Below, piece by piece: positions 5,855 through 6,587 of a DNA stretch of 20,931 nt (its first letter is position 1; every line of letters starts with the position of its first letter). Below the pieces are notes generated by a model. The model was not told the DNA's origin and made no database searches. It saw nothing but the letters and a program-made list of their open reading frames with translations. Source of the stretch: Octopus sinensis (taxonomy: Eukaryota); the NCBI RefSeq assembly GCF_006345805.1, contig NW_021823677.1, positions 1 through 20,931 on the forward strand, given 5' to 3'. Both the position numbers and the translations under genes were made by a program.

Positions 5855-6587
5855 AATATAAGAGAGTGGTCACTATGTGGCTCACTCTAGCACTAGTAAA
5901 TCCAAAAGGTTTCAACCACACAAAATACATGTTTCCCATGAAAGTCAGTACGATTGTTAGCTCACACGAACAGGGCAAATAAAAAACAACAAAAATACAG
6001 ATTATTTTGGGACAATTGTTTCGCTATTAATGAATTAAATGTAATTTTACTCACAAAAAACTCACTTGTAGCTCCTCAGCCAAAACTATCTGGATTAAAT
6101 CCACTCAATCACACGCCAGATTTTACCATAACGATAAATACACGTGTGGTTCAATTGATTACATCCGACGTTATAATTCAAATGCCCCTACCAACAGCGC
6201 ACCAAACTTTCACGGAAACAAATACTACATTTAGAAATAAATGTAGCATAATTATAATTAATTAATAAGGGTGAGAGAATTAGATACTAATTTAATAGTA
6301 TATCTATTCAACACCAAGTGGCCCAGTGCCTCGAGAAACCTGGATTATTATAATATTTTATGACATATAATATTTTATACAAAAATAAATATAAGAGAGT
6401 GGTCACTATGTGGCTCACTCTAGCACTAGTAAATCCAAAAGGTTTCAACCACAAAAATACATGTTTCCCATGAAAGTCAGTACGATTGTTAGCTCACACG
6501 AACAGGGCAAATAATAAACAACAAAAATACAGATTATTTTGGGACAATTGTTTCGCTATTAATGAATTAAATGTAATTTTACTCACA
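5855..6587 (-). mobile_element. Partial-tandem HHR-bearing repeat (retrozyme-like or Penelope pseudo-LTR-derived): 532-nt unit plus 5'-truncated second copy
   Basis: Direct repeat 5855-6055 vs 6388-6587 differing by one indel and one substitution; HHR spans the repeat boundary; no coding capacity on the ribozyme sense strand that I recognise. Confidence 0.8.
6005..6085 (-). ncRNA. Type I hammerhead ribozyme, canonical core
   Basis: Minus strand: UUUUGG-CUGAGGA-GCUA-(42 nt)-UAGC-GAAA-CAAUUGU-C-CCAAAA. 6-bp stem I, CUGANGA and GAAA intact, G10.1-C11.1 pair, palindromic loopless stem III ACAAUUGU, GUC triplet; predicted cut between 6011 and 6010. Confidence 0.9.

What the first reader, a model, noticed from the sequence alone, without database searches (positions are those of the whole stretch)
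5855..6587. Intact hammerhead ribozyme in a 532-nt partial-tandem unit: candidate cephalopod retrozyme / circular RNA
Seen: every conserved core nucleotide is present on the minus strand at 6005-6085. A 200-nt direct repeat (two differences) places a second GUC-CCAAAA cleavage site at 6543/6542, 532 nt upstream of the first (6011/6010). The upstream copy lacks CUGAGGA but keeps ACAAUUGUC-CCAAAA. Known: loopless palindromic stem III HHRs cleave as dimers, and non-LTR retrozymes are ORF-less tandem HHR repeats expressed as linear and circular monomers. Inference: the enzyme strand of the full copy could pair through the palindrome with the truncated copy's substrate strand; a second RNA molecule would then be needed to cut the downstream site and release a 532-nt monomer. 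Near-identity of the repeats suggests recent activity.
Basis: partly seen in the sequence, partly recalled or inferred. Interest (0 to 1): 0.92.

Follow-up and report, generated by a model that had tools for sequence, protein, structure and literature searches.

The report
Hammerhead ribozyme retroelement copy in microsatellite
A real, intact-looking self-cleaving hammerhead RNA motif sits in a 1.4-unit copy of a short gene-less mobile element inserted into a (TA)n repeat; this is a known kind of animal "retrozyme"/Penelope-type parasite and the copy is probably a dead-end daughter, so it is a tidy but ordinary find.

Summary
Minus strand 6086-6004 is the only site in the 21-kb window that satisfies a full type I hammerhead descriptor (0/1000 shuffles at the observed stem lengths). 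Rfam Hammerhead_1 aligns to it end to end (28.6 bits; gathering 34) once the speed filters are relaxed. The 203/204-nt direct repeat (two differences, 532-nt spacing) is real and places a second GUC/CCAAAA site at 6543/6542 without a catalytic core. The insertion (about 736 bp, 1.38 units, no ORF, 32% GC) is bounded by (TA)n. The best reading is a monomer-type copy of a non-LTR retrozyme, that is, a non-autonomous Penelope-like-element derivative. It was made by more-than-unit-length reverse transcription of a circular or multimeric RNA. However, the locus has only one complete ribozyme, so it fails the published criterion for an active retrozyme. The "loopless" stem III is the Rfam consensus architecture. 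The downstream site is preferentially served by the ordinary monomeric fold. The retrozyme-versus-PLE contrast is outdated. No related copy could be retrieved, so covariation, copy number, expression and the cephalopod origin remain untested. It is a new member of a known kind, of modest interest.

The parts
5855..6590 (-). Whole insertion: 1.38 head-to-tail units (about 736 bp) of a 532-nt ORF-less element. Layout on the minus strand: 5'-truncated copy (6590-6388), then a full unit (6387-5855).
   Evidence: no ORF with a Pfam hit
6004..6086 (-). Complete type I hammerhead ribozyme. Helix I 6086-6080/6010-6004 (extends to 6092/5998 across an A.A mismatch); CUGAGGA 6079-6073; helix II GCUA/UAGC 6072-6069/6026-6023; GAA 6022-6020; helix III ACAAUUGU 6019-6012; C17 6011; predicted cleavage between 6011 and 6010.
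6029..6066 (-). Extra 38-nt imperfect hairpin inserted in loop 2 of the hammerhead. The consensus loop-2 letters CA (6068-6067) and AAUA are kept on either side of it.
   Evidence: Rfam alignment; fold
6536..6590 (-). 5'-truncated hammerhead: only the 3' part of the helix II hairpin, GAA (6554-6552), ACAAUUGU (6551-6544), C17 (6543) and CCAAAAU (6542-6536). It has a substrate site (6543/6542) but no catalytic CUGAGGA box.
6011..6542 (-). Predicted 532-nt unit-length RNA between the two cleavage sites. GC 32%; circular MFE -140.5 kcal/mol, z = -5.4, 69% of bases paired.
5855..6058 (-). Downstream arm of the direct repeat (pseudo-LTR-like), 204 nt.
6388..6590 (-). Upstream arm of the direct repeat, 203 nt, with two differences from the downstream arm.
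5829..5854 (-). Possible short 'tail': about 26 AT-rich nt after the downstream arm that weakly resemble (about 70%) the start of the next unit (6387-6362). This may be chance.
   Evidence: PLE tail concept
6591..6610 (.). (TA)10 abutting the 5' end of the insertion (target microsatellite).
5735..5837 (.). (TA)n tract of about 100 bp on the 3' side of the insertion (target microsatellite).

Best explanation
This is one fairly young insertion of a short, ORF-less, hammerhead-bearing retroelement of the animal non-LTR retrozyme class, which is now regarded as non-autonomous derivatives of Penelope-like elements (PLEs). Shown here: the insertion is 1.38 units of a 532-nt sequence. It lies in minus orientation inside a (TA)n microsatellite. 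It carries one complete canonical type I hammerhead whose loop 2 holds an extra 38-nt hairpin, plus a second cleavage site without a catalytic core. Inferred, in the family's life cycle: multimeric transcripts are cut by the hammerhead, probably helped by double-hammerhead pairing through the palindrome ACAAUUGU. This gives unit-length RNAs with 5'-OH and 2',3'-cyclic phosphate ends. A host tRNA ligase circularises them. A PLE RT/GIY-YIG enzyme supplied in trans nicks AT-rich DNA and copies more than one unit length of the circular or multimeric template. That yields the '5'-truncated copy + full copy' layout seen here. Inferred, for this locus: with a single catalytic core it is most likely a dead-end daughter copy. 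If transcribed, it should cut its downstream site (6011/6010) in cis. The upstream site (6543/6542) could be cut only through a less favoured cis fold, or in trans by a second RNA of the family.
For: Hammerhead: every core nucleotide and the three helices are present, and it is unique in the window; 0/1000 shuffles at the observed stem lengths. Fold z = -4.55. Rfam Hammerhead_1 gives a full-length alignment, 28.6 bits, E = 1.2e-5, with consensus-like helix III and loop-2 letters. Element: a seamless 532-nt partial tandem with two differences in 203 nt. No ORF and no Pfam RT or GIY-YIG anywhere in the window. GC is 32% and the unit length lies within the published 51-972 bp range. The unit RNA is compactly folded as a circle, z = -5.4. 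Insertion signature: (TA)10 abuts the 5' end and a (TA)n tract of about 100 bp lies 18 nt from the 3' end, while (TA)>=5 tracts cover only 3% of the window (joint chance about 0.1-0.5%). PLEs form partial tandems/pLTRs, carry HHRs there and prefer (TA)n or AT-rich targets. Dimer and trans pairing are predicted as MFE structures. The local monomeric fold is favoured in cis.
Against: No second copy of the family could be retrieved from any collection, so conservation, compensatory changes, copy number and linkage to a PLE are untested. The Rfam score is below the gathering threshold, and the motif is missed entirely with standard filters. N7 = G and a 38-nt insert in loop 2 are unusual, and the archetypal loop1-loop2 tertiary contacts are not evident. 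No cleavage, transcription or circle has been observed. The 1.38-unit layout could also arise at the DNA level. (TA)n tracts are common in this genome region (30 tracts in 21 kb).
Confidence: 0.68

Rival explanations
1. The locus is itself a working retrozyme. Its transcript is cut at both GUC sites: the upstream site by the full copy's core through the palindrome, and the downstream site by a second molecule. This would release a 532-nt RNA that circularises and propagates.
For: Trans and double-hammerhead pairings are the predicted MFE dimers. A nested cis fold on the upstream site is feasible. The monomer folds compactly as a circle. The two arms are about 99% identical.
Against: There is only one catalytic core. 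The locus fails the criterion of at least two complete HHRs used to call active retrozymes. The cis fold on the upstream site is 5.2 kcal/mol worse than the local fold. No promoter or expression evidence exists. It is a single copy in the window. PLE-type HHRs have low in vitro activity even as dimers.
Confidence: 0.15
2. It is a DNA-level product rather than a retrotransposition product. That could be a small fragment of a hammerhead-bearing satellite array, or a local tandem duplication by slippage or unequal exchange, that happens to lie between (TA)n tracts.
For: Hammerhead satellites exist (newt satellite DNA). Retrozyme arrays are proposed to expand by unequal crossover. Microsatellite-rich DNA is recombination-prone, and no target-site duplication can be read in (TA)n.
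Against: Unequal exchange between the flanking (TA)n tracts would leave a (TA)n spacer between the units, but the junction at 6388/6387 is seamless. Both ends coincide with (TA)n, as expected for PLE endonuclease targeting. The 5' end is truncated inside a structured motif, as expected for incomplete reverse transcription.
Confidence: 0.1
3. It is a chance hammerhead-like motif in an unrelated repeat.
For: The score is below the Rfam gathering threshold, and the motif is missed by standard filters. No homologues are available to show conservation.
Against: 0/1000 shuffles reach the observed stems, and even the relaxed descriptor is expected only 0.013 times per window. The alignment to the model is full-length, with consensus loop-2 letters and a palindromic helix III that my descriptor did not require. 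The motif coincides with a partial tandem in (TA)n, which is the known genomic context of such ribozymes.
Confidence: 0.03
4. The 203-nt duplication is an assembly artefact, and the true locus holds a single unit.
For: PLE-type tandem and inverted structures are known to cause assembly problems. The region is full of microsatellites.
Against: The two arms differ at two positions and have different flanks, (TA)n on one side and unit-internal sequence on the other. That is not what a collapsed or duplicated read-overlap artefact usually gives.
Confidence: 0.04

Closest known systems
Metazoan non-LTR retrozymes (Cervera & de la Pena 2020, PMC7229834; Li, Clavereau & Pollet 2026 preprint, 10.64898/2026.07.22.740005), including the mussel Mytilus galloprovincialis repeats of 350-390 bp
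   Same: Type I hammerhead. AT-rich (GC below 45%). No ORF, LTR, PBS or PPT. Unit length within the reported 51-972 bp range. Head-to-tail arrangement. Helix III is short and palindromic. As in the mussel HHRs, the archetypal loop1-loop2 contact nucleotides are not obvious.
   Different: Only 1.38 units with one complete ribozyme, whereas active loci have at least two. Loop 2 carries an extra 38-nt hairpin. Expression as linear or circular RNA is unknown. No paper in the searched library reports the class in cephalopods, and the source organism is unverified here.
Hammerheads in the pseudo-LTRs of Penelope-like elements (Cervera & de la Pena 2014, PMC4209133; Craig et al. 2021, PMC8557442; Frangieh et al. 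2024, PMC11167929)
   Same: Layout of a 5'-truncated copy plus a full copy, forming a direct terminal repeat. The HHR is associated with that repeat. Insertion is into (TA)n or AT-rich DNA. There may be a short 'tail'. The palindromic helix III implies dimeric action.
   Different: No RT/GIY-YIG ORF in the unit or anywhere in the window. [quoted passage not shown] It is not the PLE 'min-HHR', which has no helix III, helix II of 7-8 bp, helix I of 4-5 bp and a bulged base.
Newt/salamander satellite and Schistosoma type I hammerheads that cleave as double hammerheads (Forster et al. 1988 and Epstein & Gall 1987, as cited)
   Same: A weak intramolecular helix III made of a palindrome, so two copies can form an extended intermolecular helix III with swapped helix I strands. 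This is the predicted MFE dimer here.
   Different: Those occur in long arrays with many complete ribozymes, while this locus has one. Here helix III is 2 bp plus AAUU, the 'invertebrate-like' more stable form, so monomeric activity may be appreciable.
Discontinuous hammerheads, in which enzyme and substrate strands are separated by hundreds of nucleotides (Martick et al. 2008, cited; details from my own knowledge)
   Same: The feasible cis fold has helix I closed by the roughly 450-nt body of the unit, so the single core addresses the upstream site.
   Different: Here this is only a predicted, energetically disfavoured alternative conformer. It is not a conserved arrangement.

Membership tests
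Hammerhead ribozyme, type I (Rfam RF00163) | Invariant core: C3 U4 G5 A6 N7 G8 A9, G12 A13 A14, A15.1-U16.1, H17, G10.1-C11.1 | tested here: met
   Direct reading of 6079-6011 on the minus strand; descriptor scan; Rfam alignment. N7 is G, which is a permitted position.
Hammerhead ribozyme, type I (Rfam RF00163) | Three helices around the core, with helix I open (type I topology) | tested here: met
   Helix I is 7 bp (12 bp with one A.A mismatch). Helix II is 4 bp plus an extension. Helix III is the palindrome ACAAUUGU. Fold z = -4.55.
Hammerhead ribozyme, type I (Rfam RF00163) | Score at or above the Rfam gathering threshold (34 bits) | tested here: not met
   28.6 bits, E = 1.2e-5, full model 1-45/45, on a 111-nt input. 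There was no hit at all on longer inputs. The shortfall coincides with a 38-nt insert in loop 2.
Hammerhead ribozyme, type I (Rfam RF00163) | Helices supported by compensatory changes among homologues | not testable with these tools
   No homologous copy was retrievable.
Hammerhead ribozyme, type I (Rfam RF00163) | Mg2+-dependent self-cleavage 3' of C17 | not testable with these tools
   This needs in vitro transcription.
Non-LTR retrozyme (metazoan) | Tandem repeat with at least two consecutive units that each carry a complete HHR (criterion of the 2026 preprint) | tested here: not met
   One complete HHR (6086-6004) and one 3' half-motif (6590-6536). The locus corresponds to the 'monomer derivative' class.
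Non-LTR retrozyme (metazoan) | No ORF, LTR, PBS or PPT; low GC; unit of a few hundred nt | tested here: met
   ORFs of 107 aa or less with no Pfam hit; GC 32% and unit 532 nt; published ranges are. PBS and PPT were not separately searched.
Non-LTR retrozyme (metazoan) | Multicopy family in the host genome | tested here: inconclusive
The protein index barely covers this organism: a SINE present five times in the window returned one hit.
Non-LTR retrozyme (metazoan) | Expressed as unit-length linear and circular RNAs | not testable with these tools
   No transcriptome access.
Penelope-like element (autonomous) | ORF encoding RT plus GIY-YIG endonuclease between the terminal repeats | tested here: not met
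   Only 329 nt lie between the arms. No RT or GIY-YIG was detected in the window.
Penelope-like element (insertion signature, shared by its non-autonomous derivatives) | Partial tandem (a 5'-truncated copy upstream of a full copy) forming pseudo-LTRs, with an HHR, inserted in (TA)n or AT-rich DNA | tested here: met
   against the descriptions.
PLE 'min-HHR' variant | [quoted passage not shown] | tested here: not met
   Here A9 is followed directly by G10.1. Helix III has a 2-bp stem plus a palindromic AAUU. Helix II is 4 bp before the first internal loop. Helix I is 7 bp.

The most novel reading that the evidence does not exclude
The 532-nt unit represents an active retrozyme family in a cephalopod, a group for which none was found in the searched literature. 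Its hammerhead tolerates, or uses, a 38-nt hairpin inserted in loop 2, with internal loops replacing the usual loop1-loop2 tertiary contact. The family is expressed as abundant circular RNAs of about 532 nt, and single-core loci like this one are processed in trans by other family members.
Probability: 0.2. Interest if true: 0.45.

Novelty: new member of a known kind. Interest (0 to 1): 0.3.

Why it matters
If the family proves multicopy and expressed, it would extend ribozyme-made circular RNAs (retrozymes) to another animal lineage. It would also add a natural hammerhead variant with a large loop-2 insertion, which is useful for understanding how much the helix I-helix II tertiary contact can be remodelled. 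The locus also illustrates the link between retrozymes and Penelope-type insertion: a partial tandem in (TA)n without any PLE ORF nearby. A practical point also follows. Standard Rfam scanning missed this motif on both window-scale inputs. It surfaced only when a roughly 110-nt slice was scanned, so genome-scale censuses probably undercount hammerheads that have stem or loop insertions. As a single locus it is ordinary repeat annotation.

Tried and rejected
1. Rfam at gathering score on the whole window, and at E<=10 on 5600-6900, gave no hammerhead. This was a filter effect and was resolved.
2. My first DNA search pattern allowed a gap that was too short for the 50-nt helix II, so it found nothing.
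3. I tried to retrieve other copies through spurious ORFs. ORF 5954-6262(+) had no word-sharing candidate in the 5.8-billion-protein index.
4. Exhaustive HMMER with 5942-6262(+) gave one hit, P0002. It is a repeat-rich protein that looks bacterial, with RCC1-like and IPT-like repeats by eye (not scanned). It matched only through a weak 'VAPQPxLSG' similarity summed over its repeats, and I rejected it as spurious.
5. The exact 21-mer AGCGAAACAATTGTCCCAAAA gave 0 hits in metagenome, GTDB-genome and IMG/VR contigs.
6. The pattern CTGANGAGC-N35-60-GCGAAACAATTGTC in metagenomes gave two hits, L002 and L003. Both are GC-rich bacterial DNA with no similarity beyond the fixed letters. L002 appears to lie inside a coding region, by reading only. 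L003 has no helix I pairing. I estimate about 3 chance matches for a collection of roughly 10^12 bases, which is my assumption and not a documented size. Both were rejected as chance.
7. Attempts to identify the organism failed. The look-up of encoding contigs with ORF 8259-8924 found nothing on record. The SINE-derived ORF gave one Logan contig, SRR11869391, whose organism is unknown to me. The LINE zinc-finger ORF had no homologues.
8. A search for PLE coding remnants found none.
9. Other ribozyme classes on either strand: nothing at E<=10.
10. ARAGORN found no tRNA genes.

Full report

Yes. Reading the minus strand gives: GUUUUGG (6086-6080), CUGAGGA (6079-6073), GCUA (6072-6069), a long imperfect hairpin, UAGC (6026-6023), GAA (6022-6020), ACAAUUGU (6019-6012), C (6011), then CCAAAAU (6010-6004).

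That is a complete type I hammerhead. The core is C3 U4 G5 A6 G7 G8 A9. The G10.1-C11.1 pair, G12 A13 A14, A15.1-U16.1 and C17 are all present, and cleavage is predicted between 6011 and 6010.

A descriptor I wrote requires both catalytic boxes, an H17 and minimum stems. It finds this site and no other on either strand of the 20,931-nt window.

In 1000 dinucleotide-preserving shuffles the relaxed descriptor occurs 0.013 times per window. The strict one, with the stem lengths actually observed (7/4/4), never occurs.

The 101-nt region folds with helix I (12 bp across one A.A mismatch) and a long helix II, at z = -4.55.

**2. The Rfam result.**

Rfam reported no hammerhead on the whole window at gathering score, nor on 5600-6900 at E<=10. 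That was a filter effect.

On a 111-nt input, RF00163 Hammerhead_1 aligns from model position 1 to 45 of 45 to 6085-6005 (minus strand). The score is 28.6 bits against a gathering score of 34, with E = 1.2e-5. That is about 2e-3 if scaled to the window.

The alignment is informative in three ways:
- The model's own consensus helix III is a loopless 4-bp palindrome (ACGCGCGU).
- The consensus loop-2 letters CA...AAUA are retained on either side of a 38-nt inserted hairpin (6066-6029).
- That insertion is what costs the score.

**3. The repeat.**

Segments 5855-6058 and 6388-6590 are direct repeats spaced 532/533 nt apart.

The alignment shows exactly two differences in about 203 nt, one substitution and one 1-nt indel.

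On the minus strand the upstream arm starts at 6587-6590, inside helix II, immediately after (TA)10. It therefore lacks helix I 5', CUGAGGA and half of helix II. It keeps GAAACAAUUGUC|CCAAAAU, with C17 at 6543.

The junction between the upstream arm and the rest of the unit (6388/6387) is seamless.

After the downstream arm, about 26 AT-rich nt weakly resemble the start of the next unit. The (TA)n tract of about 100 bp (5837-5735) follows.

**4. What the element is.**

The unit between the two cleavage sites (6542-6011) is 532 nt with 32% GC. Folded as a circle its MFE is -140.5 kcal/mol, z = -5.4, with 69% of bases paired. Three of four control segments of the window gave z between -1.5 and +0.5. 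The fourth contains a long inverted repeat.

It has no meaningful ORF. The longest frames are 107 aa or less and have no Pfam hit.

No RT or GIY-YIG remnant exists anywhere in the window. The only protein-like remnants lie about 3 kb away at 2565-3235 (minus strand): a weak C2H2 zinc-finger match plus what looks, from my own knowledge, like the tail of a LINE ORF2.

(TA)>=5 tracts cover 3% of the window. Having one tract abut the 5' end and another lie 18 nt from the 3' end has a joint chance of roughly 0.1-0.5%.

**5. Comparison with the literature.**

- Animal type I hammerheads typically lie in AT-rich, ORF-less tandem repeats called non-LTR retrozymes. [quoted passage not shown]
- Consensus lengths of 51-972 bp have been reported, along with monomeric, dimeric and multimeric loci. 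[quoted passage not shown] Monomers are viewed as offspring that cannot transpose (10.64898/2026.07.22.740005).
- The same preprint argues that these elements are non-autonomous derivatives of Penelope-like elements (PLEs).
- PLEs insert as partial tandems, a 5'-truncated copy upstream of a full copy. These form pseudo-LTRs that carry hammerheads, often with a 30-40-bp 'tail'. They show a bias for (TA)n or AT-rich targets that hides target-site duplications (PMC8557442; PMC11167929).
- More-than-unit reverse transcription of circularised RNA was proposed as the origin of the head-to-tail layout (PMC4209133).
- Canonical metazoan HHRs have helix I of 6 bp, helix II of 4 bp and helix III of 1-2 bp capped by a 2-4-nt palindromic loop, and they act as dimers.

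The present motif fits that canonical form. Helix II is 4 bp before an internal loop. Helix I is 6-7 bp before an A.A mismatch. Helix III is 2 bp plus AAUU.

It does not fit the PLE 'min-HHR', which has no helix III, an extra base after A9, and a helix II of 7-8 bp.

**6. How it most likely works.**

*Shown:* the anatomy described above.

*Predicted by thermodynamic modelling:*
- Two full motifs form a textbook double hammerhead as their MFE dimer. It has an 8-bp intermolecular helix III, swapped helix I strands and open cores, at -59.2 against 2 x -26.7 kcal/mol.
- The full motif plus the truncated copy forms a trans-hammerhead on the upstream GUC site, at -37.0 against -31.3.
- Within a single 743-nt transcript of the locus, the active monomeric fold on the downstream site (-190.7) lies 2.7 kcal/mol above the MFE (-193.4). 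The nested cis fold that presents the upstream site to the same core, with helix I closed by the body of the unit, is -185.5.

The downstream site is therefore the natural cis target. The upstream site needs a disfavoured fold or a partner RNA. A second molecule is helpful but not logically required, because one core could act twice.

*Inferred:* the family cycles through HHR-processed, ligase-circularised RNAs. A PLE enzyme supplied in trans copies them at AT-rich nicks. This locus is a product of that cycle, with reverse transcription starting near ...CUCUUAUAUU and stopping inside helix II of the next repeat. With only one core it is probably a dead-end copy.

The two differences between the arms indicate a fairly recent insertion. 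They do not indicate activity of this locus.

**7. What could not be done.**

The decisive computational test is conservation with compensatory changes in other copies, together with copy number and linkage to PLE ORFs. It was impossible because no relative was retrievable:
- Protein-index and exhaustive HMMER searches with the frame spanning the HHR gave nothing, or a spurious repeat-protein hit.
- Exact and gapped DNA patterns gave no hits, or two bacterial chance hits.

The protein index clearly under-samples this organism. A SINE present five times in the window returned a single Logan contig. These negatives therefore say little.

The cephalopod label is unverified. From my own memory the SINE next to the element resembles an abundant octopus SINE. 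In the searched library I found no paper reporting cephalopod retrozymes.

**8. Verdict.**

This is a genuine hammerhead motif in a single 1.38-unit, ORF-less, retrozyme/PLE-type insertion. It is a new member of a known kind.

The claim that this is an active retrozyme or circular-RNA locus is not supported by the locus architecture.

Interest is modest (0.3). The mildly unusual points are the 38-nt hairpin in loop 2 and the fact that standard Rfam scanning misses the motif.

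Noticed in passing
window 5-144, 5558-5739, 10993-11382, 11873-12093, 18811-19213: At least five copies (74-94% identical, both orientations) of one SINE-like repeat whose head reads ...GGTAAGTAGCTTGCTTACCA...GGGTTCAGTC.... From my memory it resembles an abundant octopus SINE. The copy at 5739-5558 lies directly beyond the (TA)n tract that flanks the hammerhead element.
   Followed up: partly
window 5229-5529 (+): A second, tRNA-derived-looking SINE (the reverse complement of the minus-strand text shows an A-box-like TGGCTCAGTGGTT). 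It appears to be inserted into the internal (TA)n/(CA)n microsatellite of the first SINE, whose 3' part resumes at about 5140-5070. It is 77% identical to Logan contig L001 (SRR11869391). ARAGORN calls no tRNA in the window.
   Followed up: partly
window 15248-15934: A 171-bp tandem repeat of 4.0 copies with 88% matches, AT-rich. It contains no hammerhead boxes.
   Followed up: no
window 20273-20640 and 4313-4539: A 184-bp unit repeated twice in tandem (91-92% identical), with an inverted copy about 16 kb away at 4313-4539 (88-91%).
   Followed up: no
window 17366-17444 / 17551-17629: Inverted repeat with 79-nt arms, 90% complementary, and a 106-nt spacer. It is itself embedded in (TA)n tracts (17317-17386, 17676-17699). 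It looks like a MITE or foldback element and explains the extreme fold z-score (-15.6) of that control segment.
   Followed up: partly
window 2565-3235 (-): Stop-interrupted protein-like remnants. One has a weak C2H2 zinc-finger match (Pfam E = 2e-4). Upstream frames contain ...GHIVPMADERMPRQ...GK...RKPKKK..., which from my knowledge looks like the C-terminal tail of a LINE ORF2. No homologue was found in the protein index.
   Followed up: partly
window 6986-8212, 3384-3660, 3994-4264, 8428-8911, 9968-10328, 19766-20101: Very large microsatellites, including (AAT)~417, (CTAT)~71, (CCA)~90, (TGG)n, (ATT)~121 and (TCA)~113. They generate all the long low-complexity 'ORFs' in the window.
   Followed up: no
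window 5990-6100 compared with whole-window Rfam scans: Method note: cmscan missed a full-length, 28.6-bit Hammerhead_1 alignment on a 21-kb input and on a 1.3-kb input, and reported it only on a 111-nt input. Hammerheads with loop or stem insertions may be systematically under-counted by filtered scans.
   Followed up: yes
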